NCBI RefSeq assembly: GCF_003704095.1
Contig: NW_020847620.1
Coordinates: 1 to 64,000, forward strand
DNA length: 64,000 nucleotides
Direction of reading: 5' to 3'
DNA from: Pocillopora damicornis
Taxonomy: Eukaryota
This document shows, one piece after another, positions 44,576-64,000 of the stretch. How positions within the stretch are numbered: the first letter of the stretch is position 1; each line of letters opens with the position of its first letter. The notes below the pieces were generated by a model. It did no database searches. It saw nothing but the letters and a program-made list of their open reading frames with translations, and had not been told where the DNA came from. Made by a program: the position numbers and the translations under genes.

Positions 44576-45914
44576 AAGTTGTCAGTGTCCCTGCTCTGTT
44601 GTTCGTAAATGATTTGAGTCATCTTTGTGTCAAGAATATGCTTCAGGCAAAGAGTTTTAAGAAGATGCCAGAGCAAGCTCTTTGTCAGAGCAGGCTCTTT
44701 GCCAGAACAGGCACTTTGCAAAACAGGCTCTTTGCCAGAACAAGCTGTTTAGAAACACACACAAAAGAAGTCGTTAATGAAAATGTTCTGAAAATTTGCA
44801 TGTGAAAAATTTTGGGTTACTGCTGTCATTCTTCCATAATTATTCATATGTCTCCTTGAGAAATGTGCTCTTGCGTTATATTTTCATTCATCTCAAGAGG
44901 AATAGCTATCCCGACGAGTTAAGACAAAGAGACTCAAAGTTTGTTCCAGCATCACATAAAATCCGGTCTATAGGAAGAACAGGTAGTTATTGAAATTAAT
45001 TAGACGTGAGAAATATTACAGCTGAAGTATATATAAGTCATCGCACAGCATAACCTTCAAAACTAGTATTTCTAACCCTCGTGGAGATTGACTTAAGTAA
45101 ATGTTGTTTCTTTGTATATTAAAGTTTTTGTATTGGCAGCGAGAATAATTATAAATCATGTCTTCCCCGAAAATATCCACCTTCAACAAATTTCTCTCGA
45201 TCAAAAACTCTTTTCGGCTCTTGACAGAATCAGTAGTTTGTATTTTAACTCAGCGTGTGAAATTTAATTTGTTGCTTTCCCTTTCAGAAATCCTAGAAAG
45301 CACATTAAAACTGAGCAAGTTGGGATTAAATTTATTTTAACTTCCCAAGAAAAAAATTTTTATGCATTTGAAGTTCTTCAATAACGTGTAATTTAATGTG
45401 GATAAAAGAAAATGTCATCAATGTTTGATTACTGGTTTGTTTGTGGCCAATCTCCAGGAATTGCATCATGTCATCATTGCTAATTTTAATTTCTTCGCTT
45501 TTTTATATCTGTATAATTTTACATTGTTTAAACTAATCCTTCTTCGTTTCCTTCTTATCCTGTGGACAGTATGTCGTCATTTTCATTGCTTAATATAAAT
45601 AAAGGTAAATTCATTTATCAAAGTAAGCGCTGTTAAAGAGCGGTTTTTCCGCGATTCTGCGTCATCACTGGCCTTCATCACTGTTTATCGGTGCAGTAAC
45701 AGCCCGCTGTTCGTCGTTTGCGGCCCGCTGTGCGCGTGCTCGAAAATTGCACTTTCCCATTCGGCTGTGTTTACTAATGCATTTGAAATAACAACCTTTT
45801 ATTCAACAAACAGAACATAGTAGACGCACTGGGGATTGTTATTGGATCCACCACCAAAAACTCCAGACAAACTGCATTATATTTTGGACGGAACTCCCTT
45901 GAAATCACAGGCAT

Positions 45915-47585
45915 ATGTCCTCTCAAGTATCACCTAGAAACATGGCGTCTGAGTCGCTCCATTCTCGCCAAAACAAAGCAGATACGTTCGTCGTTTCAAT
46001 CCCTGACGACGCAAATGGCAACCAGCTGTTTTTAAAGAGATTGAACGAAATATACAGCCCTGCGCTAAAGTTGTTGAAGCTTTTCGGGGCGTACTATGGA
46101 CAAACTAATTTAAAACATTTGGAATGCAGGCCAACCAGTCGGCGTGGAAAACAAATATTTTCGAAGATATATTGTGGTCTGATGATTTCCCTTTTATGCC
46201 TTGACTGCGTTATGGCTGTCTCTGGGATTTTTACCTCAGGGGCAGAATTTGTCTTTTTGATGTTTGCTCTTATAAAACTTATGATAGTTATCTGTGGAAT
46301 AACCTCATTAGCTTTCCTTCCTTTAACTACTCCCAGAAGATGTCGATTCGAACAATATCTTCGTAGCTTAATCACAAACAGCAAAGGTATCAATTTTAAT
46401 TTTGTGAGGAAAAAGTCGAGAAAAGGCTTCATAGTTATCTGTTTACTTTATGTACCAATTGTTACGTTTGCCGTTATCGGTGATCAAAAGTTGGACCTTG
46501 GCCTTACTTGTTGTAAGCCTTGGAGTGAGTGGTTTGGCTTTCGAGTGATTGCGCAGTTGTCTACAATTATTGGCAGTGCAGTGTGGTTGCTTTCGATGTA
46601 TTTCTTCTATCTAACCTGTAGAATCCTAGTAGAATGTTTCGATGGGCTTTATAAGAGAATGTCATCATTATCTCCGCTCTCAGCGGACTTTCCATCTTTG
46701 AAAATGGAACATCACAAGTTATGCGAAGTAGTCGAACTTGCCGACAAGATGCTCGCTCCACTCCTTCTCGGGGTTGTGGCGTTATACATCCCAATGCTGT
46801 GCATCAGTTTTTACAACTCTGTCATTTTCCAAGAGGATTTGAAGTTGATGGCCCTTGCTGCTAATATTTCCTGGTGCTTTATTGCAGCAGGCGTCTTAGC
46901 AATTGTCCTGTTCTTTGGATCTAAAGTCAGCGAAAAGGTGTGTCGGGGAAATTTCATATCAGTTCATTGATCGATCTGCCTTTTAAACGTTTTTGATTTA
47001 CCAGTTTGCATTTTTGTTGTTGTACCGTCGGTTGGTGTAGTATATTTATTATGTTCCTATTTATATACACTTAGTATTCCTCAGATTCTTTTTTTTAGAT
47101 TCACAGTTTTCAAAAGATTTTGCAAACGCTTCCCGTCTCGACAGCAGAGGAAGCAAAGGTAACTCCTATTTTCTCTATCTATGTATTTATTACCTTATTC
47201 CAACCCCATTTCCTGTTTCGCAAAATGCTTCACGCAAATCAAAGGCAACAAATTTTATCGAAAGCCTTTCCCACGCTTTTAGTAATTCCTAAAGCCTTCT
47301 TCCTTTCTGACCATTTCCAGGTATTGCTATTTTTACTCGACCTTCAAGGAGAACCGAAAGGTTTATCAATTGGAGGATTGCTGGTCATATCCAAGTCCAC
47401 ATCCTTGGCGGTAAGACCTGTGATCTTCATCTTGTTTAGTTTCTTCTCGCTTAAGGTTGAATTGAGTTTGAACTTAATGAAACCCCTACACATTTTGCGA
47501 AATTTCACTGTCTGATAATGTTCTATTTCAGATTGCTGGAATGATTGTCTCCTACTTCACAGTTCTTCTATCTTTGCCGCGTTGA
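45915..47585 (+). CDS. Gustatory receptor-like 7TM protein GRL-1, 408 aa
   Basis: Exons 45915-46937, 47099-47158, 47321-47410, 47532-47585. Three phase-0 C-terminal introns; H..LCE.V...D..L.PLL motif, GLSIGGLLVI, and terminal helix IVSYFTVLLSL, typical of the GR/GRL (7tm_7) family. Confidence 0.9.
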
Positions 47586-49594
47586 CGTTTGAAAGATATA
47601 ACATCGTTTAGTTATGTCAATTAGATGGTTCTCAGATTTCAATCGAGGGCTAGTCTCTATCACTGAAATTGTTGGTTTTCTCGAGGTAAAAATTGATGTC
47701 AAGGAGAAGCCTTGTGACATTTTATCCTTTTTGGTAGCAATGCAGCCTTCAGTAGACTTGCCATTTTAAAGGTTGTTGTAAAGTTCTGACTTGTGCTCTG
47801 GAGCATGCTTTTCATTTATACGAAAATATTGTGATATAGAAATGAAATATGTAAAAATTTAATAATAAGTCTTATTTAGTGACTGATGCAAATCCTTATA
47901 ATTATGCTCAGATAGCCCTTGATAGGTTTATTGTAAGCCATGATAATAGTTTTGTAGGTTGTACTGACAAAGGATTGTAAAAATTTGTAATATTATGGCG
48001 CCATAATAAGAACCGGTTTTTGGTAGTAATATTACTAGGCTTATAACAAATGATACAATTTCTTTAGAGATTGTTTAGTGTTTAATTTTTTTATCAGTTC
48101 ACATTGATATTTGTAAAAGTTGCTTAAAAACCATGTTGATTAAGAAAATTCACGTCTTAATCGATAAAATTCTCTCAAAAACTGGGAAAATGTGATGTAT
48201 TTTTCTTTAGTTAACTACAATTCATTATTTTTTATCCTTTCGTTTTTTTGCTTTCTAAGCACGATATACATTTAACAAAGTGTGTTACGACATTGTGCAA
48301 TGAACTGTTGTGTCTTTGCAAAAAGCTGATATCAATTCTTTTTCATAGTTTGTTTTACTTTGTTTAAAGTTTGGCAGTTCCCTATCTTTCTCGTGGTAGT
48401 TGTTCTGTCATGCGCATTTGTGTCAACCGCAATATTTCTCTTGATTAAATACTGAGTTCGAGCGCGTTTAAAACGAAACATTTATCTATCGTTCATTAAA
48501 GAATTGCCACTTAACCGCGCATGCATCATGACAATTCCCTCCTCATTTCGGAAGCTAACGGTACGATATTCGTAGGGAAATGTTTAAATCAAGAACGATA
48601 TGGAAATTTGATTAAATTAATTTTTCTGGAACAATTCTGCCTGAAATATATTGCCCATTGTCGAAAACTCTTCTACGCTGAAACTATTATTTGGTCAAAT
48701 ATCGCCGAAAACACATGAGCCCTTAACAGGCTGGGATTAATTTCCTTTGAACAACACACAAGAGAGCTACGCACTTTAATTTTGTTTGTTACGCGTAAAT
48801 AAACGTGCAAAGAGCAAACGGCACCGATGTTTAATATTCAGAGCAAGAGCTATTAAATTATAGATCACTTTACTTCCAAATATCTTTTAGGAGGAAGAAG
48901 AAAATAATTAGAAAAAATTATTTCCCCTCTATGTTAAAAGCCGATGCCTTTCGATATGACGTTAAAAGTTCTGACACGAAACATTCCTGGAGAAGAAATA
49001 CAGAGTACATCATGACTTAGTCTCAAAGGAACAAATTCACGCCAGAAAAATGCAAATAAGCAACATGCCTGACTGAAGTAATTTTAACATCATTTTTATA
49101 AACAAACAAGGCCAACTACTATCAATAAAGCGAGCAACCAGTTATAATGAAATAGTGGGCAGTGAATTCAAACGCATTTCCAATTATTCTAGAATTGTCG
49201 AGTCAACAGTTCGTTTCGACTTGGTTAACGCGGCCCTAGTAACAAGTAAGAGAATTTAGGCAATAATGAGTCGTTTTTTCGTGTAGAATTTCTGCCGTAT
49301 TTAGCCCGGTTCAACCGTGACTACGTATACACAGCTGAAGTGAACTTCAGCCTCGGTGGCGCCATTTCGGGAACTGAACCTCCTTGTTTTGCTTTCAAAT
49401 TTTCCAATTCTGGGCGTCGATCAATAATTTCTTCCGTTTCTTCTATAATGCGATTGAAAACACTGCAGCTTGCTCAAGGCATGTTGGGACATTGCATTAG
49501 CTGTGTATTCTGATGCGTTTTGGAAAGCAACAGTGGTTATCTTAGTTTGGAATGGACCGCATTTTAGACCGAAATTCCTTCAAATAACAAAAAT

Positions 49595-51242
49595 ATGCTG
49601 TCTCAAGTATCAATAACAAAGGAGATGTCGGGGTCCCTCCATTCTCGTCAAAAGAGTGTATCATCGTTCGTCGTTTCAATCCCTGAAGACGCAACTGGCA
49701 ACGAGCAGATTTTAAAGTCATTAAACGAATTATACAGCCCTGTGCTGAAGTTGTTGAAGCTTTTCGGAGCGTACTATGGACAAACTAATTTAAAACACTT
49801 GGAATGCACGCCGACCAGTCGACAAGGAAGGAATATATGCTCGAAAATGTATTGTGGTCTGATGATATCCCTTTTATGTTTAAACTTCGTTATGGCTGTC
49901 TCCGGGATTTTTGCTTCAGGGGCAGTATTCGTGTTTTTGATGTTTACTCTTGGCAACCTTTTAATAGTTATCTGTGGAATAACCTCATTGATTGTTCTTC
50001 CTCTGGCTATTGGCAAAAAGTCACGATTCCAACAATATCTTCTGAGCTTATTAGAAAACAGCAGAGGTATTAATTTAAATTCAGTGAAGAAAAAGTCGAG
50101 AAAAGGCTTCATAGTTCTCTGTTTACTTTATGTGGAAACTGTTACGTTTTCTATTGTTAGTGATCAGAAATTGAACTTTGGCCTTGCTTGTTGTAAGCCT
50201 TGGAATGAGTGGTATGGCTTTCGAGTGATTGCGCAGTTCTCTTTATTTACTGGGAGTGCTGTTTGGTTACTTTCGATGTATTTCTTCTATCTAACCTGTA
50301 GAATCCTTCTAAAATGTTTTGATGGGCTTTATAAGAGAATGTCATCACTACCTCCGCTCTCAGCGAACTTTACATCTTTAAAAATGGAACATCACAGGTT
50401 ATGCGAGGTGGTCGAACTTGCCGACAAGATGCTCGCTTCACTCCTTCTCGGGGTTGTGGCGTTATACATCCCAATGTTGTGCATCAGTTTCTACAACTCC
50501 GTCATTTTCCGAGAGGATATGAAGTTAATGGCCCTTGCTACCACTCTTTCCTGGTGTTTTGTTGCGGCAGGAATCTTAGCAACTGTCCTGTTCTTTGGAT
50601 CTAAAGTCAACGAAAAGGTTTGTCAGGGGAAACATGTCTTTTATTGATTATCCTATTTGTGCAACATTTTGGATTTGAAGTTTTATCCTAATAGAGATGG
50701 TGGGTGTAGACCTTTCGTTTTTTGTGTTTTTTTTATTATGCTCTTGTGCATGTACTTAAATTTCATAATTTAACATTTGTCTTTCAGATTCACAGTTTTC
50801 AGAGCATTTTGCAAACTATGCCCGTCTCTACAGCGGAGGAAGCTAAGGTAACTTCTATTTTTTTAACGCTTTTTTTCCAAAATACTTGCGCGAAACAAAG
50901 GCAACACTCTTGTGTACAGCCTTTCCAATCCTTTTCAAAACTCTCATCCTTCCTCTCCCATCTTTTCCAGGTACTGTTGTTTTTACTCGACCTTCAAGGA
51001 GAACCGAAGGGTTTATCAATTGGAGGACTGCTTGTCATAACCAAGTCCACATCCTTAGCGGTAAGCTAATGCATTGTCTTCATCATATCCAATTTCCATT
51101 AGCTTATGATTGAATTGTGATTTAATTTAACTGAACGCCTAAACATTCTGCAAAAAATTTTACTGTACTAATCTACTTCTCATTTCAGATTGCTGGGGTA
51201 ATAGTGTCCTACTTTGCAGTTCTCTTATCTTTACCGCGTTGA
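49595..51242 (+). CDS. Gustatory receptor-like 7TM protein GRL-2, 408 aa (recent duplicate of GRL-1)
   Basis: Exons 49595-50617, 50788-50847, 50971-51060, 51189-51242; ends IVSYFAVLLSLPR. Confidence 0.9.
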
Positions 51243-53251
51243 CGTTTAAAAGATATGACACTGTTTAGTTCTTTAGAAATGCAAAATGCATTAAAAGATG
51301 TGTCGATTCTTAGACTTCCATCGAAAATTAATCACAAGTACTGAAAATTTTGATCATGTTGAAGTAAAATCTAATTATTGTTTTGTTCCATGTTGGTTGA
51401 ACCTATAACCTCCAGTGTACTTGCTATTTTGGAGCTCGTCCTTAAGTTATAATTTTTTCTGAAGAGGCACTTTTCCAATAACCGAAGGAAATTGTGACTA
51501 AAGAAAAAAGAACATACTTCCAAATTTAATAACTCTTACATTGTTTAGCAAATGATGTAAATATTTTAGATGTCCCATGATAGGTTTAGTGAACACCATG
51601 TAGATAGTATTTCTGTTAGTAGAGAAAAAGTATTTTCAACACATTTAGCATTTTGGCGCTGTAATGAAAAGTTTTTATTTTGCGTGATATTAGTAGCTGT
51701 GTCTCTAAAGTAATGATATCAGTACTTTTTTCATAGGGGGCCAAGTAAGTCTTACTTGATAGATGGCATTTCGTGAGAGAATTATTATAATCATTACGTT
51801 TTCATTAGTTTAACATTGTAAACCTGCTAACTAAAAACCCATCTTGATTGAAACAGCTAATAAAATATCAATAAAATTCATTAAAAACTAGGGAAATGTG
51901 ATGGGATTTTAATTTTTAGTTTGATTTTAAGTTCATAATTTTATTGTTTTGGTTGTGAGATACTATGTCATACAAATAACAATTCTATCACAGTGGGACA
52001 TAAAAAAATTCATAGATAATGTCAGGTTTTCCTTATTGATTTTTTTCTTGGCTCGTTTTCCGTGGAAATGAAGTTTACAAACCAGTATGTTTTCAGTGTC
52101 AAGATGTCCTTTGTCCAAAAATTGACTCACTTTACTAATAGCCTTTAAGTTAAAGCCTTGGGAGGGGAATTTTTTCACGAAAAGAGTTTAGGCACTGTTA
52201 CTGTGGCTGCAAAAAAAAAAAAAATCAAAATTTAATTGTCATGACCACACTTTAGGATTACTTTCTCTCTACTGATCGCGTAAATCATTTACATACTAGA
52301 AGAGAGGAAACAATATCGATATGAATATAGAAAATTAATTACGAAATTGTAAAAGTTCAAAATCATACCCGAGCAAAAAGAGGAAACAAAAAACAAAAAG
52401 CAAAAAACAAAAATAAAGAGTCATACCATGCAGAGTTGGTACGAAATTTTAATTATCAACTTCATCATTTTCCTGAGAACTCATCAAACAAGTGCTTCAC
52501 ACCTCGTTAATTTCTGCTAATGCCCTTTCTTAATTGCATCCCAAAAGATCGAGGAGATCACAATAAACCTGATTGCTTCATTTGTTTGTCGGTCTATTTG
52601 TTATAATCAAAATGTTGTTACTATAAACCGTTAGACGAGCATGAAATTTCAGTCTTACAGGTTAAAGGATAATGTATTGAAGTTTTAAAGCAACGTTACA
52701 CAGACTAGAACTATGATAACCCTACTTTGCTTCACACTGCTTGAAGGGTTTTCGTCTATCTGTCGTTAACTCTTTTTGTGCCTCGCGCTTAATATTCAAA
52801 CAAATTTTCTCTTGCTTCATCTGAATTTGAAATAAGGTAGCGAAACGGGAAAAAAAGCTAAGTAAATGTTTGGAGAGAAAATACATTATTTATTTGCCTG
52901 CTAAAATTATTAGTTATGAGTCTCACTCCAAGCTTGAACAACTGGTAGCTTCTCAAACTCCATTATTTTGACAATGAATTACCAACATCTAGGCGTGGTT
53001 TTTTGTCTAGCTTCTCTCACCTTCTCATGATTAGAAATGTAATTAGTTTTTTTGTTTGATTTAAGACTGTTTTTTAATTAAAAAGAAATGTCATTTTGAT
53101 CACAGTGGGTATTTTCCGATTTGAATATGAATACGGATCTCCCCAAATTCAAATTGAGCGACATCACTGGAAACAAATTTAAAAGACCATAGCTGAGAAC
53201 TAAAGGTAATAATCAAGTTTCCTTGTAAACTACTTGAGAATCAATCTTCTG

Positions 53252-55853
53252 ATGATTATGCCAGCTAGAGTATCTCCAAACGAATGTACAGTGCCTTTAG
53301 ATAACGGAATGTCCTATTCCAATTCTGAGCAACAAGCTACCGTGAACGAAGTTTCAAACTTGACTGGTTCGCCTCCCGAGGCAAAAAATGTGAACGAACA
53401 TCTGTTTAAGGCAATCAGTGACATCTTCAGGCCTATACTCAAGCTGATGAAATTGTTTGGAATATACTACGGGGATAACACTCTGAAATCTTTGACAGAT
53501 GATTCTGGTCGTTTGTCGAGGAGAGCGTATGTTTCACTCATGTATTGTGGTCTGGTAGCTACTGGCCTTTGGTTCAATTTCTTTTTGGCTTTTCTCAGTT
53601 GCTTTTTTGTCCCTGAGAGGATCTATGTTTCTTTAATGTTCTGCTTATGGTGTCTTATGGGAGCACTGAATGCAACAATTACCCTGATTGTGTCACCAGT
53701 AACAAGAACAAGAAAATCACGTTTTCAGCACTTCGTTCGTGGTTTAATCGACAATAAGAGTCATGCTACGTTGGAAAAGGTAACAGTCAAATCAAGAAAT
53801 GGCATAATTGCGTTTTTCCTTGTATTTGCTAGTGCTACTGTGGGATCTTTGATGACAAAGCTAAAGCTTGATATGAATCTTGCCAACTTTAAGCCTTTAA
53901 GTGAGTCACCTGTCTTTGCCATAGTTTCCGTCATCTTTCTGATAATAGCTGTTGGTTCGTGGTTGCTTCCAGTACTCCTTTTCTGTATTACGTGTCTCAT
54001 ACTGGCGGAACTGTTTGATGATTTGAGTAAGCGGATGAAACAGCAGTCATTGCACTCAACAACAGTGCAACTAGCTTCTTTTAAGGTGGAGCATCACCAA
54101 CTGTGCGAGGTTGTGGAACTGGCCGCTGCCATGTTTTCTCCTCTACTTCTCGGAATGGTGTCTCTATACATTCCTTTGATTTGCTTCAATTTGTACCTCG
54201 CTGTTCATTCACCTGGGAAAACTGAGGAAACGAAATATTTGTTCATGGGAAATAACTTTTTCTGGCTCATTGCGTCAGTTTGTGTTTTAACAATTATCAT
54301 GCTGTTTGGATCCAAAGTGAGCGAAGGGGTACGTGTACATTTTGAATCATTATTTGTTTTTTTGATCCTATTTTCCTAGGATAATTTTATTATTCTTTTA
54401 CATCCATCTCTTATTAAATGCAAAACATATCTTCCACTTAAAGTGCTTCCACCTTTTGAATTGATTACAATGTAGGGCCTGTTGACTTTGTTATTGTCTT
54501 GTATAGTTCTTATTTGTTTTTCTTTAATTTCAATATTTGATAATGTTATTTTTATTCCAATATGCTTCAGATTCACAGTTTTCAAAAGATTTTGCGAACA
54601 GTTCCTGTTTCAAAAGAAGACGAAGGAAAGGTAATTGCATATTTGCGCGATTAAGAGAAACTTTTCCTTTTCTTAACTTAGATTAATCTCCTCATATATT
54701 TTAATTGAAATAAATATTCGCAATGAAAGCCGCCCAGGAAAAATAAGCTGTAAAATAAATTTAAGAAATCTTTTTAAAGCTGGTGTCACAATGTGTTGTG
54801 CTCATGTAGAAGGCTTTTCGATCTACAAGAGAGCAAATTATTAGCTGCCATTTAGATAAAGTAAGTTTGGGAGTAGAAGCAGTTGTAAATACAGGTGACA
54901 GGCTGATTCAACATGGCCCCCTATCTCTTCACGGTATTATTATGTTTTCTAGCTCCTCTTCTCAGTCTAAAAACGATTAATTCTCCCTATAAATTTCGTC
55001 ATCCACTTTTACTCCAGAGAGGGTGAACTGAAATGTTTTATTTCTCTTTCTATTATCTTTAAAATAATTATAATAGAAATAATAATTACAATAATAATAA
55101 TGAAGAATTTCTATAGCGCCAAATTGATCGGCTCATAGCGCTTTACAACACTTTGCGGGGGACCTTGGCCAGACTGCATTGAGCAGTTCACAATTTTTGA
55201 AGGAAATTTTTTGGAGATGCCTCCATTTTCAGAATTAAGGCCAGACCACAATACGAGGAGATGCGTTCCCTAATCTTTGCGAGAAATGCACGGGTTCTTA
55301 AATATGCCCTTCTAACCAGTGCGTATAAAATGCAGGAGACGGGGCCTACGGTTTTTCGTCCATCTTCGAGAAGACTAAAATAACTAACCATAGCGAAGAC
55401 AGCACATTCTCCTTAGTCATTTTAGGACACTGAGTCGTTTGGCCTTAGGCTTGAGCCTTCGAACTCCCATACGGCAGTCCGGTGCTCCCTACGACATGAG
55501 CTAACCAGGCGGCGGTTTAAATAACAATAATAATAATAAAAAATGGTGACTTAGTTTTTCCTATGGATTCAAAAATTGATATTTATCGATTCTTATCTAT
55601 TTTCAGTTGGTGATGTTTATGCTTGATCTTCAGGGAGACCCACAGGGTTTTTCAATTGGTGGTCTTGTGGTCATCACCAAGTCCTTGTCTTTGACGGTAG
55701 GTCTATTCCGCGAAAGGCAGCTTGATTTACGCGAAGAATTACAATTTTGGTTAAAATCTGCTAATTTTGCAATTTATTACTATTTTAATTTTTTGACAGA
55801 TCGCCGGAGTGATTATTTCTTACTTCGCTGTTATGTTGTCTCTGCCGAATTAA
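53252..55853 (+). CDS. Gustatory receptor-like 7TM protein GRL-3, ~426 aa
   Basis: Exons 53252-54328, 54571-54630, 55607-55696, 55800-55853; ends IISYFAVMLSLPN. The ORF-track start at 53234 is TTG; the first ATG is at 53252. Confidence 0.9.
55075..55518 (-). mobile_element. Near full-length tRNA-derived SINE in GRL-3 intron 2
   Basis: Minus-strand head 'accgccgcctggttagctca...gagcaccggactgccg..ggagttcgaaggctcaagcc' (Pol III A/B-box-like), (ATT)n tail, and 'acaataataataat' on both flanks. Confidence 0.75.
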
Positions 55854-57367
55854 CAGCAATCATGGAGCTACGTCAGTAATACCACTGGTTTATCAGTCTG
55901 TAGACGGTTATGCGACTTAAGTTACTGTTTTTTAGAGATAGATTGATATCCTCAGCTGTAGCTTATTATGTTAGGTAGTGTGTAGATGACTTATAGAACG
56001 AGACAGTACTCGGAAAATCAACGACACATTATTCGTCCTTGTCGAAGCTCTAAGGCTGAAACTGAGGGACAGCGCCCTAGATTGGACCAGTTGGATAAAC
56101 AAAAAATCAGCAGCACTGTCAAAAATTTTGAGCCATAATTTCCTAAACTGGGCAGAAAAAAAAGTAAAGAAAGAAAGAAAGATGAAAAATGGAATTACCT
56201 GGTTTTATATTTAGTGGTTTAAAGATGTACGCCATAGACTATATAGGCGCATATTTTAATGGTTAATTGCCTGAAGGTATAGATAGGATAGAGCAACCAG
56301 CAAGTGCTCAATATAGACGGAGCGGAAAGGAGAGAGTCCAGATTGTAAATTTGTGTAATTCGAATTGAAAGGAAGAAAGTCGTAACCGAAACTTTTATTC
56401 TAGTGGTCATATTACTCGTTTAAAATATTTCCAAGTATGATTAGCTTTCCCGTTGTAAGCGTAGTCTTTCTACTGAAAGGAGCAGTTATTCAGCTCTTCA
56501 AGGATTAGAGTATCTCGTAAAACAGTTTTTGGTACAGAAAGGCTTTTTTTGACATGAGTTTAAGATATTAACTTTTCCTTTTATCCAAATTTTTTGAGGT
56601 GGCCAGTTTGTATTTAATGTAAATGCAAGAAGGGTTTGCAAGTATGCATATCTGATATCGAGAGTTATGCAAATAAATGCTGGTTCAATTGACATGCGCC
56701 TTTTCCTAATGCAAAAAATGTTGCTTCAACTTGACAAAAGTGCAGATAAGTTCAGAACTCTTTTGTCCAATAAAGCCAGTCATTCGACTGATATTGCTAA
56801 AGAAGAGACTGTTCCTTTAACGATAACCAGTAAGATCGACTTAAGCTAGATTAATAATTCTAACATTAATATAGCATGGAATGATGTTTATGCAACCTGT
56901 CTAAGAACACAAAACTTCCTGTTTGGACATTTTAAAGAAATCGATAAATCTAATGCGAAAAAGGCTAAATTATTGAAAGGAATTTTGAACAAAGTAATAA
57001 GTAAGTTAGTGGCGTTTAGGAAAAGGAAAACCTAATTTGTGAGGGAAGTATGTACAATAACATACAAGCAAAGGAAATAAAAGCGGACAGCGTATTGACA
57101 TTTAATTAAAACTTAAGTAAATAGTTGTGTTTTTTTCCCAGAGGAATAAAGTGTATTGGGTATTAAGGGAAATATAAGTATGGAACAGTGCTTCTTCATC
57201 GTTCATTGCATTTTATTCTACCTTTAATTTTATTTTTTCTTATCATTTATCATTGCTATTTGGTGTCCACAAGAGAAAGGATTTTAAAGAAAGTTCGTCT
57301 TTATTAATACACTCATTTTCTGAACCAGGTGACTAAACATAAATGCTAATCCAGGTTTCTCGGGCAA

Positions 57368-58363
57368 ATGAGTGATAGGTTTACTAGTTATTGTCGGATA
57401 TTGCTGCTCCTCAAAGCTGCTCCTCAAAGAAGTCAGAGTATTCTGAAAACAGCAATGGTTAATTTTGAGTATAACTCTTACCTCCTTGCTTTGACAATTG
57501 GCGACTTCATTTTAGCGACTCTTACCGTTCTTGGAAATCTTCTTCTTCTCACCACCATTAAATTAGATCCTGTGAGATGTCTTCGAACACCCGCCACCTA
57601 TTTAATCGCAAACTTATCTCTAAGTGACTTATTTGTCGGACTTATTATTGGTTATGGCCGTGGCTTGGTTGGATGTTTCATGTATAAAGACGAGACCCAA
57701 CCTTCTTGGATTAACTTAGCTATAAACGTCGCAGGAGGGGCATCCATTATCAACGGCATATGGACAGTTATTGCGATGGCGCTTGACCGTTACATAGCAG
57801 TTACCGATCCTTTCCATTACAACGAGCGAATAACAGGACGAAAAGTCCACACATACATCTTTGTTAGCTGGGTAATGGCCACGACGTTGACTGCGTTCTA
57901 TCCTTTGGCAGGACAAATCTGGGCAGTCATTTTATTGGTGTTCTCCCACACACATTTCACAATTCCCGTGTTTGTCTTGCTGTTTGTTTATTGTCGAATT
58001 TTTTGCTCACTCTCCGCAAGAAGATACGAACTTCAACGTTTAACAACATCGCTCTCCACAATAACTCTACGGCATGCCCTTGAGAGAGAGCGGAAAATGG
58101 CGCTGACTTCGTTTGTCATTTTGAAGTTGTTCTGTGCTTCTTTTTTGCCCTTTTATATTAAGATTCAGCTGTTAAATTTCTGTAGTTGTCAGGATACTAT
58201 GGCTTTCCGAAGGTTTGACTTAATAAGTCATACTTTCCTTTACTTATCTTCGTTTGCGAACCCTTTTATGTATGCTTGGCGGGTGCCAAAATTTCGACGA
58301 TCGTTACAAGAGTGCCTTCACATTAAGAAAAGAAATAGTGTACGCCCCATAAACATCAACTAA
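57368..58363 (+). CDS. Intronless rhodopsin-class (class A) orphan GPCR; alternative start at 57455
   Basis: TM1 GN, TM2 LSLSDL, TM3 DRY, TM4 W, TM6 FLPF, TM7 NPFMY, helix 8 FR. Confidence 0.93.
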   Translation: MSDRFTSYCRILLLLKAAPQRSQSILKTAMVNFEYNSYLLALTIGDFILATLTVLGNLLLLTTIKLDPVRCLRTPATYLIANLSLSDLFVGLIIGYGRGLVGCFMYKDETQPSWINLAINVAGGASIINGIWTVIAMALDRYIAVTDPFHYNERITGRKVHTYIFVSWVMATTLTAFYPLAGQIWAVILLVFSHTHFTIPVFVLLFVYCRIFCSLSARRYELQRLTTSLSTITLRHALERERKMALTSFVILKLFCASFLPFYIKIQLLNFCSCQDTMAFRRFDLISHTFLYLSSFANPFMYAWRVPKFRRSLQECLHIKKRNSVRPININ

Positions 58364-59550
58364 GATGGCGAAGGGTAAAATAGTAAACAAAGGTACAAGG
58401 ATATCAATTTCAGCGATTCCGCCACCATTGTGTCGAAAAGCACGAGCATTGACAACCTAACTCAGTCAATAAGCATTTTAAAATATAAAAGTTTCCATTA
58501 AAGAGCTATTTCAGCCCGCATCTCAGGGACCATGCAGCTCCTTCGGGCCTTTTTCACTTCCATCGCGTGCGGCTCTCAGCCAGGTATTTGGATAGAAAAA
58601 ATTTCAATAAAAGTGCGTTATTCGCTAAAAGGGTTATGCGATAAAACTTTCTTTTATTCTTTTTCAAAGAGTTGAAAGTTTAAGCTTTTAACTTTTGTAA
58701 CTGTTGCTCGTAATAGTTGCTCATAATGATATGATCTGTGACTTTTAAAACTCTCCACGACTCACCAACAGCATTGAATAAATTAGCTTGGCTTTCATCA
58801 ATATTACGATAAAACAAATTGGGACTAAAAGGAAAAAGAATTTGCATTTTCACGTAGTTTACATTTTTCTTAGCTCTAAAAAGATGATTTTTCTTACCAT
58901 AGTTATAGAGAAAGTAGTTATATACATGTCTTCACTTATCGGCAAGTATGAAATAAGTCAGTTTAACTGCAGATTATAAATGGAAACGACTATATAAATA
59001 TCCTGGAATAAGAGGAGTCTTATAATGTAAGGCTTAGAAAAAGCTATCTACAGTTTCTTTATTTACAGTTGGCATTTGAGGATCTATCTGTGACATAATA
59101 ATTAAGGTTTACTAGGGATTCCATTGTTGGAGGTTAAAAAAATTGAATTATATACGGAACAAGCGTACATTTGCATACACCAAAACTGTTATTCTCCTTA
59201 AAGGGTGATAGATTAGAGCGATAGCATACATCTCCATCATCTGCTTACAGCAGAATCAACAAAGTTTCCGACATAAGTCATTTAACTATTACAAGGAAGT
59301 TTTCACCAATAAATAACTTGAGCTATGCAGCAAGGGTATATATACGACTAGGCTCTTTAATTACTTCAAGGTATGGGAACTACTGGTAAAGACATCACTG
59401 GTATAGCTTGATTAAATGTTCCTTTGATAATTCATAAGTGTTGACTCAAAACTCTTTAGAATTCCATGAATGATATGAAAACTAAAGCAAAAGAAACAGT
59501 AAGAGCAGAAAATGCATCCGCTTCATGTCTGGTCATGTCCTTCCTCTTCT

Positions 59551-61979
59551 TCAACTTGGCAATGTTATCAATACAGCGAAGTAGGAGATGATTATTCCTA
59601 CGAGCTGCAAGGAGATGAGAGAAGGTGACTTTGGGTTAGATTTCAAGTAATTAGATGGATAAAAATAAAATCAAAAGCAAAGAAATAACAACAACCGAGG
59701 TAAAATCGATGGCATAACCGTGAAGAGAAACCAAGAGAAATACCGAGATAACCAGGGACTTGTCGATCACCACAAATCCACCAATGGACAATCCAATGGG
59801 CTCTCCCCGAAGATGCATCATGAAATGTAAAAGCTAAAAATAATAAATGGTAAAAAAAAAAAAAAAAAGATAAATAAAATACCAATGAATCAAGAAGAAA
59901 ATACCTCTCAGATTTTGCAATAAAATCTGGAGAACGTGATCACAGCCCTTCAAGCCAAAGTAAACGGGCTAAATTTAAATATTTCGCAGTGTTCATTTGC
60001 GAAGGGTAGCAAGGATTCTACCAATTTTACAGCGCACGTCTACACGAGTTTGTCAGCTATCGGTTTTTTTTTGTTCACAACTTAGTTGGCCTCTATCGGT
60101 TTGGTGACTCAAATGGCTCTCCTAAACATCAAATTTCTCCAAAACACTAAGAACTTCTTACCTCTAAGTGACCCTTGTTGTCAGGAACAGTGAAACTTTG
60201 TAAGATGTCATAAAAGCTGTGAATCTGAAGGGAAGAAGAAAGGATGAAGGTAGGTAATTATGATACTTTTTCGACAGTGTTGAAATTAGGCCTTAAATAA
60301 ATTCTTGTTTCCTTAGTTTACCTTCTTCACAATCCTCTCTATGGTGGCCTGTAATTTTCATTATAAACTACAGGTTCAAAGTTGAAACTACTCTTCCAAA
60401 GTTACAGATACGTTTAACATTTGACAGAAACGCACAAAAAAGAATAATTTGCATGTAAATATGATAGATTAGTTCACTCCTTCGACGTTTCCTGCTAGGA
60501 TTTTTACAAAAGGAACATTTCTCGTATAGATTTAAGCTAGAATCAATTAATTTTAAGACATGCTGTGTCGTCTAGATTGACTGTTTTTACATGAAGCAAT
60601 GTTAAATTTCTAGGAATCGTTTGTAAAGTTGTTTAACCTAGACATATGTATATATATATATATATTTTTTTTTTATTTTTATTTTTATTTTTATTTTTTT
60701 ATCAAGGAGGCAGAAATCTACGAAATTTTGCCATGAAATCCCTTGCGATACAGATTCAGCCTAGATGAAGCATTTTAATAGGCTCTTTTGTAAACAAACT
60801 GAGCACATTAGAAATTGCCACCGGACAGATGTCGAAATCTTGACACGGACAAAAAACTCTGTCGCAAAGCTGTTTTAAGGTTGGAGCCCTGCTTAGTTTA
60901 CTTGATAAGGATAAAAAAAAAAGTGTTGAAAACCAACGATGCAACAGGAAAAATCTTACCTTTTCGTTGACTCTAACTCCCGCCAAAAGGATAAAAGCTA
61001 ACTTAACAACCACACAAACAGACCAGTACAAAAGTGAGACAAGATACGTAAAGTCTGAACTCGTAGATGCGTTCGATTTCACCAGCTGGTGATAGTTGAA
61101 ACACATCAAAGGAACATCTAAGCCCACTGCCGCCAAAAGAAGATGAGAAAAAACTTTATTTGCGAGATCAACCCGCACACAAAGTTTTCGATGTTCCTGC
61201 CGAATCCATCTGATATCGGAGGCATCAGGATCGCCTGCTTTTACTTTGGTCTCCAAATCCTCAAAAATTCCAAGCAGCAGATCGCAAGATACGTAAAACA
61301 ACGAAAATGGCAGTGCCCATGAAAAGCAACTGCAGAAGATAAACGCAAAGAAGTTCAAGCGATAAACCAGAAATCCGTTCCAAGGACGAAAAGAGATTAT
61401 CGAGCCATACATGAGGTCTAAAGAAATAACGAAGAGGGTGTTGAAAATAGCAAAGAAAGTGACGGAAGCCAATATCAAGTTCACCTTACATTTCTTTGAC
61501 CTTCTTTCATTACTTTCTGCACTGCACAAGCTGCTTAAGAATTGCGAAAAACGGGATGACTCTGCTTGCCTGTTTGGGAAAACGTATAGACATATTGTTG
61601 CAACTACTGCACATTGTAGAGCCCAGATGGAGAAGATCAACACAAAATAAAATCTCTTCAAATCTGCAAAACCTTCAAAGAAAACAGTTGTAACGCACTG
61701 CACCACGACACCCCACTGACCAAGAGTTACAATTCCGCGGTACAGACGAGAAAAGAGGCGCGAACTAGTTGCAGGTACCTCGTTTAGCACCAAAACATCC
61801 TGAGAGCACTCTCCGGTTAATTTCATCAAATATATAATGGGTCGAAGCCTTGAAGCTATTTCTTTACGGCGAGGATGGTGATCTCCGGACGCATTTCTAG
61901 ACTCGCTCAATGCAGTTTCGTTTTCTTGTGATTGTTCGGAAGGTACATCTTGAAGGTGAGAGTTATTTACATGCAGCAT
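59551..61979 (-). CDS. Gustatory receptor-like 7TM protein GRL-4, 408 aa
   Basis: Exons 61979-60960, 60224-60162, 59833-59744, 59604-59551; same three phase-0 introns; EHRKLC, GEPIGLSIGG, IISYFAVLITLPS. Confidence 0.9.
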
Positions 61980-64000
61980 TGTTCGAGACGACAGAAAACG
62001 ATGAGCCTATTTTTCAATAAAGTCGACGAACTAGTTGACTTTATACTAAAAGAAATGTAAGCTAGATGACTATTCTCAAAAAAGCTTGGACATCTAAGAA
62101 TGCTTTCCTTTTTCTCCCTTTCTCTCACAAAAACACGACAATTTTAGTTTCATGTAGCAGTTTGTTTAACTTATTTTTTTTTTCAAATCCAACAGCTGCA
62201 AATCTACATTACTCATGTTTACATTAAAGCAGTGAGTCAATAGTGATTCAAAGGTTCTGTGTCTTGATTCACTCGGAATGAGCAGTATGATCCATTTCTT
62301 CTGTCAATTAAACCAGCTATTTATTCTGCAACTTTTCTTTAAGTACTAATTACGGAGCACCAATCAACCATTCAGAGCTATCTTCTTTCAAACGTCCACC
62401 ACATCTCCTCACAACAAGACGTTCATTTCGCAAAGGACAAATTGCATTTCAGAAGCACCATTAAATAATGCTATCTTCCACGGGAGATAATTCATGAAAA
62501 TTTTAAGAAGGCAATGTGCTTGGGCGCCTTATTGATTTCGCATCATATGAGGCCTTAACAAACCTCCGGGTGAAGTGATTTACTAAAGGCAAAACATTTC
62601 AAAAATTTTAATAATCTTTGTGGCGTGGTAAATCCCATTAATTTTGGTTACTATCTTAAAGTTAAGGTCATGCTGAGACCTCCAGTTCAAGTTGATTTCA
62701 TTTTCACAAAAATTTACATTTTATTCTAAATGAGACTTCTGGTTCAGATGATAATACCGTTGTAACTGAGAATTGAAAGCTAACTGTGGGGCACCCAGGT
62801 TGGGCTCATAAGTAAGAAAAAAACTAAAGTGGATAAAGGTGAAAAATCGGTCGTTTTGAGATGAATCATCAAGCTATCCCTTAGAAGCTGGTCTAAGCCG
62901 ACATTTTGTTTATTTGTTAGTTATTGAACGTAAGACCTTTTTTCTTTGTATCTGTCAATTTTACATGACTTTCACTTTTTGATTATTTACTCTTCACGTA
63001 ACTAAACGCTTTTTGCATGTGTCTTTGGAAATTGCTTGGAAACATTTTTGCTGCATTTTTGCATGTTGCATTTAGTGGCAATTGAGCCAAACTGTGATAT
63101 TATAATGAGGTCTTGAATCACTGTTGAGAAGAACCCAAGCATTTCAGGGAATGATCAACCCACTAAAAATAGCTTCGATTCTCGCATGTCAAGCTCTTGG
63201 CTTAGCTGGTAGTAACTAACAGGCACAGGTAAAAAAAAAGGAATGATATCTGTTTCATCGACTTCCCTAGAGTAACATGGCAGCCGCAGCACACTTATTT
63301 TTTTAGTATCTTACGGTATACGCTGAATTGAATATATGTAAACTAAATAAATATAGTCAACACAATGTAAAGGAGTGAAAGCTTGATGATATGGCTGTTG
63401 TACCTAAAAATCGTTCTCATTTGCTTCAAGTGAACCAGGGATAGCATCAAAGTTTCTAAATGCAATTGCAGTATTCTGATATTGCAAGATTTCAATGGAT
63501 ATCATTGCCAGTTGCGGCAAGTGTAAAAAGATAGTTCGAAGCAGTGTGATTGTTGCTATCATGGTGCTTAAAAAATCAGTATCAGGGAAGGATATTGGCG
63601 TTGCTACTCTTCAGTATGTTTATTCTTTGGTTATGCAGTCGAAAGAGAAGGCATTTAGGAAGCAATAGAAATTGTGAGCTATTTGTGTTATTGTAAATGA
63701 ATTAAACAACCAACAGCTGAAAGAAAGCTGAGCCACAATAATCCGATGAAGTAAAATTTCACGATGAAAGTACGTTTTTTTTCTCTCTAATCTTAAATAT
63801 TAAAAAAATTACCTCGATTGTGATTGGTTAAAAAAACTGCTCTTTTCAAGCAATTCACCTGCCAAGTTGTACTCGTACAGTTTTTTTATCAATTTTTTAT
63901 AAATTATCACTTTCATTATCATTATCATTATTAAAATAATAATTATTATTATTACCTCAGGGTAAGATCATTACAAAAGAAAGCCAGTCTAGCACAATGT

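What the first reader, a model, noticed from the sequence alone, without database searches (positions are those of the whole stretch)
45915..61979. Tandem array of four intact gustatory-receptor-like genes in a probable coral
Seen: four 408-426-aa genes, each with one long exon plus three phase-0 3' introns (60/63, 90 and 54-nt exons), of different ages, with one inverted. Known: these introns mark the GR/OR/GRL superfamily of tetrameric ligand-gated channels, and few GRLs were reported in Nematostella, where a developmental role was proposed. Inference: birth-and-death clustering like insect chemoreceptors points to an uncharacterised cnidarian chemosensory channel repertoire (feeding, settlement or spawning cues).
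Basis: partly seen in the sequence, partly recalled or inferred. Interest (0 to 1): 0.75.

Follow-up and report, generated by a model that had tools for sequence, protein, structure and literature searches.

The report
Four expressed coral gustatory-receptor-like genes
This stretch of the stony coral Pocillopora damicornis carries four intact, transcribed genes of the insect-type gustatory-receptor channel family, which was already known in cnidarians; what these coral copies sense is untested.

Summary
Four paralogous genes (408, 408, 426 and 408 aa) lie at 45915-61979, three on + and one on -. Each has one long exon and three short 3' exons (60 or 63, 90 and 54 nt), with GT..AG phase-0 introns.

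The genome is Pocillopora damicornis. Gene 3 equals a 426-aa RefSeq protein that hits Pfam 7tm_7 at E 7.4e-19. A partial GenBank model of gene 4 hits it at 4.6e-13.

RNA contigs from four studies carry spliced joints at all six predicted introns of genes 1 and 2. The protein search returned no correct model for either.

Genome-wide I count about nine intact copies, two uncertain ones and at least six broken ones on four contigs.

In my tree the coral copies form a clade of their own, sister to an anemone clade that holds Nematostella Grl2.

All coral-clade copies seen have Ser or Thr where the family's pore motif has the gating Gln.

This is a new member of a known kind.

The scan has one unchecked first-reader note of another candidate GRL elsewhere in this genome.

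The parts
45915..46937 (+). G1 exon 1 (341 codons from the ATG; six hydrophobic segments)
   Evidence: ORF and GT donor; hydropathy; RNA contigs cover it and the joint 46937>47099 is seen in run X2
47099..47158 (+). G1 exon 2 (60 nt)
   Evidence: AG/GT borders, phase 0; joint 47158>47321 in X9, X11 and X12
47321..47410 (+). G1 exon 3 (90 nt)
   Evidence: joint 47410>47532 in X2, X11 and X12
47532..47585 (+). G1 exon 4 (54 nt with stop; carries the TM7 motif, read SY-5 hydrophobic-SL)
   Evidence: RNA contigs run on to about 48438 as 3' UTR
49595..50617 (+). G2 exon 1 (341 codons)
   Evidence: joint 50617>50788 in all four runs
50788..50847 (+). G2 exon 2 (60 nt)
   Evidence: joint 50847>50971 in X9, X11 and X12
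50971..51060 (+). G2 exon 3 (90 nt)
   Evidence: joint 51060>51189 in all four runs
51189..51242 (+). G2 exon 4 (54 nt with stop)
   Evidence: record 29 of run X9 (1888 nt) lies on exon 1 from 49578, on exon 3 and on exon 4 to the end of the laid stretch; joints at all three G2 introns are listed for X9
53252..54328 (+). G3 exon 1 (359 codons from the first ATG)
   Evidence: identical to residues 1-359 of P0001; Pfam 7tm_7 E 1.4e-9 on this exon alone
54571..54630 (+). G3 exon 2 (60 nt)
   Evidence: matches P0001
55607..55696 (+). G3 exon 3 (90 nt)
   Evidence: matches P0001
55800..55853 (+). G3 exon 4 (54 nt with stop)
   Evidence: matches P0001
60960..61979 (-). G4 exon 1 (340 codons; inverted gene)
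   Evidence: its C-terminal part equals the start of P0054
60162..60224 (-). G4 exon 2 (63 nt)
   Evidence: the tail of P0054 reads through exactly this exon
59744..59833 (-). G4 exon 3 (90 nt)
59551..59604 (-). G4 exon 4 (54 nt with stop; motif read SY-5 hydrophobic-TL)
45881..47613 (+). Tandem duplication unit of G1, alignable to 49561-51270 (G2) at 78.4% over 1756 nt, introns included
   Evidence: blastn of the two units

Best explanation
The four genes are genuine, intact members of the gustatory-receptor-like (GRL) branch of the insect GR/OR family of seven-transmembrane ion channels (Pfam 7tm_7), in the stony coral Pocillopora damicornis. At least G1 and G2 are transcribed.

Shown:
- family membership by profile;
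- seven hydrophobic segments;
- three phase-0 3' introns;
- the pore-helix motif, kept at three of four positions;
- correct splicing of G1 and G2 in poly(A) RNA;
- purifying selection on the youngest pair;
- origin by tandem duplication inside a clade that, among the named rows, holds only stony corals.

Inferred from solved insect receptors (BmGr9, Orco, MhOr5, as described in PMC11100771): each protein is a subunit of a tetrameric ligand-gated cation channel. The variable N-terminal two thirds (exon 1) would form the ligand pocket. The last exon would form the pore helix.

Inferred only from the evolutionary pattern: the ligands are small molecules, from the environment or internal.

My odds are about 0.95 for identity, about 0.7 for channel subunit and about 0.35-0.4 for an external chemosensory role.
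For: Pfam 7tm_7:
- G3 as protein P0001: E 7.4e-19, 68.7 bits, residues 60-421 on profile positions 2-363 of 370.
- G4 as partial model P0054: E 4.6e-13, plus Trehalose_recp 8.6e-11.
- P0067, 98% identical to G2: 28.9 bits against a cut-off of 26.6.
- 33 of 67 homologues hit 7tm_7 and 26 of 67 hit Trehalose_recp.

A profile of the coral family finds Nematostella 'Gustatory receptor-like 2' at E 3.5e-28, and GRLs of echinoderms, hemichordates and molluscs. It also ranks Drosophila Gr64a first among solved chains, weakly (E 0.018).

Language-model features of P0001 match arthropod GR clusters at 0.96.

Hydropathy gives six segments in exon 1 of G1, G2 and G4 and a seventh across exons 3-4. The loop between segments 2 and 3 has K+R 7-10 against D+E 1-3, which fits an N-terminus inside the cell.

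All 12 introns are phase 0 and GT..AG.

RNA joints are seen at 6 of 6 introns of G1 and G2, in runs of four studies.

For G1 against G2, dS is 0.30, dN 0.14 and omega 0.46. The last third is the most constrained, at 0.30.

Against: Exon 1 of G1, G2 and G4 gives no Pfam hit on its own. A profile of nine full-length proteins found nothing among solved chains.

The gating Gln of the TM7 motif is Ser or Thr in every coral-clade copy seen. In MhOr5 its mutation abolished agonist responses, by a passage of PMC11100771.

The RNA runs are coded, assembled contigs, 95-99% alike. Stage, tissue and level are therefore unknown, and some runs may be sister species. Some contigs keep intron 1.

The only functional datum for a cnidarian GRL that I saw cited is developmental, not sensory.
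Confidence: 0.6

Rival explanations
1. The genes are GRLs, but they work in development or internal signalling, as proposed for Nematostella Grl1. They would not sense environmental chemicals.
For: By passages of PMC7746228 and PMC5850775, the only functional study of a cnidarian GRL found early developmental expression and a role in apical patterning. The family here is small, about nine intact copies, far below insect repertoires. Family members elsewhere act in light sensing and egg-laying control.
Against: The window's genes are not shown to be orthologues of Grl1. They are sister to the clade holding Grl2, and Grl1 was not among the 30 proteins I could name. Lineage-specific tandem duplication, several pseudogenes and faster change in the N-terminal two thirds fit receptors facing changing ligands better than a patterning gene. 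RNA is present in coral and marine-metagenome poly(A) libraries of four studies, stage unknown.
Confidence: 0.3
2. The coral-clade proteins cannot gate a pore alone, because they lack the gating Gln. They would act as ligand-tuning subunits that need a partner with the canonical motif, as insect ORs need Orco.
For: All coral-clade C-termini seen read S-Y-5 hydrophobic-(S/T)-(L/S): 13 of 13 spliced database proteins, plus G1, G2 and the paralogues C3382a, C3382d, C280i and C280j. Anemone and bilaterian relatives keep Q. The divergent paralogue on contig C3714 keeps T-Y...E-L. PMC11100771 says the motif is less conserved in ORs that form heteromers with Orco.
Against: Ser and Thr are still polar and could line an open pore. 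There is no co-expression or interaction evidence. The C3714 genes are very divergent, and exons 2 and 4 of one and exon 2 of the other were not found.
Confidence: 0.15
3. Some or all of the four are recent pseudogenes or annotation artefacts without function.
For: The same family has at least six broken copies elsewhere in the genome. G1 has no exact protein on record, and G2 appears only inside a chimeric model. Intron-retaining RNA contigs exist.
Against: All four frames are open with 12 of 12 canonical splice sites. Spliced poly(A) RNA is seen for G1 and G2. Omega is 0.46, below 1. Each gene has a 96-98% identical counterpart in other data sets.
Confidence: 0.03

Closest known systems
Nematostella vectensis Gustatory receptor-like 2 (NvecGrl2; P0169) and its sea-anemone relatives
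   Same: Same family and same phylum. The coral profile finds it at E 3.5e-28. In the tree the anemone clade is sister to the coral clade (99/97). Length is similar (417 aa) and the C-terminal pore helix has the conserved Tyr.
   Different: The anemone proteins keep the Q-F/Q-L end of the motif, where the coral clade has S/T-L. Duplications are independent in the two lineages. Coral copies are more numerous: about nine intact here against four reported for Nematostella (PMC5850775).
Insect gustatory receptors with solved structures (BmGr9, Drosophila Gr43a and Gr64a) and Orco/MhOr5
   Same: Pfam 7tm_7 and Trehalose_recp membership. Seven hydrophobic segments with long loops on the presumed cytoplasmic side. 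The motif's first two positions (hydroxyl residue, Tyr), a hydrophobic middle residue (Val) and the terminal hydrophobic plug position (Leu, as in Orco) are kept.
   Different: Only remote sequence similarity (E 0.018 to Gr64a with one profile, none with another). The gating Gln is replaced. The fold was not tested here. No ligand is known.
Insect-style chemoreceptor gene clusters evolving by birth and death
   Same: Tandem arrays, one inverted member, paralogues of very different ages side by side, pseudogenes in sister clusters, and weaker constraint on the N-terminal part.
   Different: The scale is an order of magnitude smaller, and an unrelated rhodopsin-type GPCR gene sits inside the array.

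Membership tests
GR/GRL family (Pfam 7tm_7, PF08395) | Significant match to the family profile above the curated cut-off | tested here: met
   G3 (P0001) 68.7 bits, E 7.4e-19. G4 (P0054) 49.7 bits. G2's 98% counterpart P0067 28.9 bits against a cut-off of 26.6. G1 exon 1 alone gives no hit, but it is 76% identical to G2 and matches G3 at E 2e-60.
GR/GRL family (Pfam 7tm_7, PF08395) | A reciprocal search returns known GRLs (criterion i of PMC7746228) | tested here: met
   The profile of 67 coral proteins finds Nematostella 'Gustatory receptor-like 2' (E 3.5e-28), a mollusc protein named 'Trehalose receptor', and echinoderm and hemichordate proteins. Only 30 of the 150 listed hits were looked up for names.
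GR/GRL family (Pfam 7tm_7, PF08395) | Length about 350-500 aa (criterion ii) | tested here: met
   408, 408, 426 and 408 aa.
GR/GRL family (Pfam 7tm_7, PF08395) | Seven transmembrane segments (criterion iii) | tested here: met
   Kyte-Doolittle peaks: six in exon 1 of G1, G2 and G4, and a seventh at the C-terminus of P0054 and P0001. P0001 gives eight peaks because one long segment (221-259) is counted twice. This is a rough method, not a trained predictor.
GR/GRL family (Pfam 7tm_7, PF08395) | Intracellular N-terminus and longer intracellular than extracellular loops (criteria iv and v) | tested here: inconclusive
   The loop between segments 2 and 3 is long (30-40 aa) and basic (K+R 7-10, D+E 1-3). 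The stretch between segments 1 and 2 is short (4-11 aa). This fits N-in by the positive-inside rule, but no topology predictor or experiment was used.
GR/GRL family (Pfam 7tm_7, PF08395) | TM7 motif (T/S)Y-hhhhh-(Q/K/E)(F/L/M): first, second and last positions | tested here: met
   S-Y at the start and L at the end in G1-G4. Motif as given in PMC7746228.
GR/GRL family (Pfam 7tm_7, PF08395) | TM7 motif: the Q/K/E position | tested here: not met
   Ser in G1-G3 and Thr in G4. PMC7746228 calls the motif 'diagnostic, but not definitive', with some GRs and GRLs divergent at some or all positions. I therefore treat this as a variant feature, not an exclusion.
GR/GRL family (Pfam 7tm_7, PF08395) | Conserved phase-0 introns near the 3' end | tested here: met
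   Three phase-0 introns in each of the four genes and in the paralogues C3382d and C280j.
7TM ion-channel fold (Orco/GR type) | Predicted or solved fold superposes on Orco or GR chains | not testable with these tools
7TM ion-channel fold (Orco/GR type) | Tetrameric ligand-gated cation channel | not testable with these tools
   Needs expression and electrophysiology or cryo-EM.

The most novel reading that the evidence does not exclude
Stony corals evolved their own expanded GRL clade in which the pore's gating glutamine is replaced by Ser or Thr. These subunits would be the ligand-tuning parts of heteromeric channels that pair with a partner carrying the canonical motif. They would serve as receptors for settlement, feeding or symbiont cues. 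That would make them an Orco-like division of labour that arose independently of insects.
Probability: 0.12. Interest if true: 0.75.

Novelty: new member of a known kind. Interest (0 to 1): 0.33.

Why it matters
Corals choose where to settle, what to eat and when to spawn by chemical cues, and the receptors are largely unknown. The GR/GRL channels are one candidate family.

This locus offers four intact genes, two of them with RNA-checked models. It also offers a genome-wide inventory and a clear placement: a coral-only clade beside the Nematostella Grl2 clade.

The Ser/Thr-for-Gln change in the pore helix predicts altered gating or a need for a partner subunit, and that can be tested directly.

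It does not open a new kind of system. The family, its presence in cnidarians and its gene structure are already in print.

Tried and rejected
The Atlas did not hold exon-1 translations of G4 and G1, nor P0050. For P0001 it gave feature matches only and no structure.

Sequence search of solved chains. The 67-row profile gave Gr64a at only E 0.018. The nine-row full-length profile gave nothing.

Placing Nematostella Grl1. It was not among the 30 representatives I could name, so its relation to the window's genes stays open.

Papers.
- Saina et al. 2015 and Robertson 2015 are not held. What I say of them comes from passages of papers that cite them.
- My memory that Robertson 2015 listed GRLs of Acropora digitifera is recall only.
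- 'gustatory receptor' with 'scleractinia' found 1 paper, irrelevant.
- 'gustatory receptor' with 'Acropora' found 6 papers, of which only PMC5850775 bears on this.
- Two broader searches were swamped by unrelated coral papers.
- Supplements were closed. Supplementary figure S2 of PMC5850775 and Figure 2B of PMC7746228, which show intron positions, could bear on intron homology and were not seen.

Rejected readings.
- GPCR-type receptors: the Pfam family is 7tm_7, not 7tm_1. Only the interloper ORF at 57368-58363 is 7tm_1.
- Pseudogenes: see the rival explanations.
- Extra copies in the window: none.

Full report
WHAT IS THERE

Five long open frames lie in 45000-63000. Four resemble each other and the fifth is a rhodopsin-type receptor.

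I read the DNA downstream of the first frame. I then searched each small exon separately against the window and checked every border. The gene models are:
- G1 (+): 45915-46937 | 47099-47158 | 47321-47410 | 47532-47585.
- G2 (+): 49595-50617 | 50788-50847 | 50971-51060 | 51189-51242.
- G3 (+): 53252-54328 | 54571-54630 | 55607-55696 | 55800-55853.
- G4 (-): 61979-60960 | 60224-60162 | 59833-59744 | 59604-59551.

The products are 408, 408, 426 and 408 aa. All 12 introns are GT..AG and phase 0. The small exons are 60 nt (63 in G4), 90 and 54 nt.

Exon-1 identity to G1 is 76% (G2), 38% (G3) and 26% (G4).

The window holds no other copy or fragment of the family. It has three 100-base N runs far upstream, which I left alone.

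WHOSE GENOME, AND WHAT IS ANNOTATED

A word-based protein search with G3's exon 1 returned a 426-aa RefSeq protein of Pocillopora damicornis, 100% identical (P0001). Its sequence equals my four G3 exons in order.

A 527-aa GenBank model (P0007) is a chimera of the tail of G2 and most of G3. UniRef names it 'Gustatory receptor'.

A 219-aa GenBank model (P0054, also 'Gustatory receptor' in UniRef) is the C-terminal half of G4. It ends with exactly my G4 exons 2-4.

For G1 the best protein on record within the searchable length range is 96% identical, from another data set. For G2 the best is 98%. So G1 and G2 have no correct model among the proteins returned.

Whole-protein statements rest on the database proteins P0001 and P0054.

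FAMILY

P0001 hits Pfam 7tm_7 at E 7.4e-19 (68.7 bits; cut-off 26.6) over residues 60-421, on profile positions 2-363 of 370.

P0054 hits 7tm_7 at 4.6e-13 and Trehalose_recp at 8.6e-11. P0067, the 98% counterpart of G2, scores 28.9 bits. A Stylophora co-orthologue of G1/G2 (P0072) scores 40.3 bits.

On exon 1 alone only G3 passes (1.4e-9). G1, G2 and G4 give nothing.

Of 67 aligned homologues, 33 hit 7tm_7 and 26 hit Trehalose_recp at E 0.001 or better.

A search of the 1.84 billion representatives with the 67-row profile found 758 proteins at E 0.001 or better, 318 at 1e-10 and 79 at 1e-30. I looked up names for 30 of the 150 listed. They include:
- Nematostella 'Gustatory receptor-like 2' (E 3.5e-28) and a second Nematostella protein;
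- Actinia and Actinostola proteins;
- proteins of a sea star, a sea urchin, two acorn worms, limpet, abalone and an annelid;
- a clam protein named 'Trehalose receptor'.

Language-model features of P0001 match arthropod GR clusters at 0.96.

Against solved chains the signal is weak. Drosophila Gr64a ranks first at E 0.018 with the 67-row profile, and there is no hit with a nine-row full-length profile.

ARCHITECTURE

Hydropathy gives six hydrophobic segments in exon 1 of G1, G2 and G4, and a seventh at the C-terminus, across exons 3 and 4, seen in P0001 and P0054.

Only 4-11 residues separate segments 1 and 2. The loop between segments 2 and 3 is 30-40 residues with K+R 7-10 against D+E 1-3. 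That fits an N-terminus inside the cell and long cytoplasmic loops, which are the criteria listed in PMC7746228 (passages). I used no trained topology predictor.

THE PORE MOTIF

PMC7746228 gives the only primary-sequence hallmark of animal GRLs as (T/S)Y-hhhhh-(Q/K/E)(F/L/M) in TM7, and calls it diagnostic but not definitive.

The last exon of all four genes carries S-Y, five hydrophobic residues, then S (G1-G3) or T (G4), then L.

The same is true of all 13 database proteins whose tails reach the motif, and of the paralogues C3382a, C3382d, C280i and C280j.

Anemone relatives end Q-F or Q-L. Of the nine bilaterian proteins I printed, eight have Q or E at that position, and most of those end Q-F. 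The Owenia tail shows no recognisable motif. The divergent Pocillopora paralogue C3714m has T-Y...E-L.

Passages of the BmGr9 paper (PMC11100771) assign roles as follows:
- The first residue forms a hydroxyl ring in the pore.
- The Tyr contacts a pore-penetrating lipid.
- The middle hydrophobic residue and the last residue form the closed gates.
- The Gln swings into the pore on opening. In MhOr5 its mutation to Ala or Arg abolished agonist-evoked calcium influx.
- The motif is less conserved in ORs that pair with Orco.

So the coral clade keeps the ring, the lipid contact and both hydrophobic gates, but has changed the gate-switch residue. What that does is unknown.

EXPRESSION

Twelve runs on record as RNA, among 21 holders from seven studies, hold 0.22-0.36 of the sampled words of 45900-55860.

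I laid contigs of four poly(A) or oligo-dT RNA runs from four studies on 45700-51600. Joints with GT..AG ends, placed at my exon borders once the stated shift of one or two places is applied, were found at all six introns:
- G1 intron 1 in 1 run, intron 2 in 3 runs, intron 3 in 3 runs.
- G2 intron 1 in 4 runs, intron 2 in 3 runs, intron 3 in 4 runs.

One 1888-nt contig of run X9 lies on G2 exon 1 from 49578, on exon 3 and on exon 4 to the end of the laid stretch. Joints at all three G2 introns are listed for that run.

Results that cut the other way:
- Two contigs keep intron 1 (one in G1, one in G2).
- One contig shows an odd 92-nt skip with GT..TA ends inside G2 exon 1.
- Contigs are 95-99% alike, so some runs may be sister species.
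- Contigs cannot give level, stage or cell type.
- An RNA library can hold DNA, and I laid no silent control stretch.

FAMILY SIZE AND HISTORY

Searches of the whole 234-Mb assembly with exon 1 of G1 and of G4 and with the Pfam profile, then exon-by-exon searches of the fetched clusters, give this inventory:
- Complete four-exon genes: G1-G4, two on contig C3382 and one on C280.
- Two very divergent genes on C3714. For one, exons 2 and 4 were not found. For the other, exon 2 was not found.
- Two uncertain copies. One has an open exon 1 but no recognisable 3' exons. The other is interrupted by N runs and a frame change.
- At least six broken copies or fragments.

These counts are lower bounds, as the tool warns.

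G1 and G2 are a tandem duplicate. The units align at 78.4% over 1756 nt, introns included. dS is 0.30, dN 0.14 and omega 0.46; by thirds of exon 1, omega is 0.45, 0.59 and 0.30.

In a 35-row tree:
- G1 and G2 are sisters (100/100), each with its own 96-98% counterpart in other data sets, beside a separately duplicated Stylophora pair.
- G3 has a one-to-one Stylophora orthologue.
- G4 sits in a different deep branch, with two C3382 copies and an Oculina protein.

In a 30-row tree with anemone and bilaterian proteins:
- The 17 coral rows form one clade (100/99).
- The four anemone rows, with Nematostella Grl2, form another (100/99).
- The two clades are sisters (99/97).
- The C3714 pair falls with the bilaterian rows.

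Three bilaterian rows have long branches and the root is not inferred. I chose the rows: named NCBI proteins plus a few unnamed ones, so the sample is not exhaustive.

WHAT IS KNOWN

From passages read:
- GRLs occur across animals, including Cnidaria and Placozoa. Functional data outside insects are sparse. Nematostella GRLs are expressed early, and one may act in apical patterning (PMC7746228).
- Nematostella has four GRLs and Acropora millepora ESTs two. None was found in Hydra. Two intron positions and their phases are shared among arthropod, cnidarian and placozoan genes (PMC5850775).

I found no open paper on GRLs of stony corals beyond PMC5850775. Subscription papers are not covered. Robertson 2015, which I recall as including Acropora digitifera, is not held.

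VERDICT

New here are RNA-backed models for G1 and G2, the exposure of a chimeric public model, a genome inventory, the coral-only clade beside the Grl2 clade, and the clade-wide Ser/Thr at the gating position.

The chemosensory reading remains an inference. It is a new member of a known kind and of moderate interest.

An unchecked first-reader note (s1-770032) reports another candidate GRL with a zinc-knuckle-like insert elsewhere in this genome. I did not test it.

Noticed in passing
window 57368-58363 (+): A single-exon 331-aa rhodopsin-type GPCR ORF (Pfam 7tm_1, E 7.9e-26) sits inside the GRL array, between G3 and G4.
   Followed up: partly
window 49595-55853; protein P0007: The public GenBank model pdam_00011435 (527 aa) fuses the tail of G2 (from mid exon 1 through exon 3) to most of G3. 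No exact protein for G1 was returned by the search.
   Followed up: yes
window 46938-47098 and 50618-50787: Some RNA contigs keep intron 1 of G1 (run X11, record 1) and of G2 (run X2, record 22). This could be unspliced RNA or DNA carried into the library.
   Followed up: no
window 50208-50301: One contig of run X11 skips 92 nt inside G2 exon 1, with GT..TA ends and two other letters in between. It is seen in a single contig only, so it may be an assembly error or a variant.
   Followed up: no
G000 contig C3382, about 21650-60800 (loci L031-L033, L037, L038): A second, larger GRL cluster: two complete genes, one copy with an open exon 1 but no 3' exons found, three broken copies, and a lone last-exon relic whose peptide is identical to that of one broken copy about 10 kb away.
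   Followed up: partly
G000 contig C3714, 394766-401088 (loci L036, L040): Two very divergent GRL genes that group with bilaterian GRLs rather than with the coral clade. In the one whose last exon was found, the canonical acidic residue of the TM7 motif is kept.
   Followed up: partly
window 42337-42648 and 43458-44135 (+): Just upstream of G1 there are a cysteine-rich ORF and a 225-aa ORF. From memory the latter looks like a fibrinogen-related domain; it was not scanned against any library.
   Followed up: no
same genome, another piece (note s1-770032): An earlier first-reader note reports a candidate GRL channel with a CxxC-x18-CxxC insert. My exon-1 searches did not single out such a copy, and I did not look for it.
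   Followed up: no
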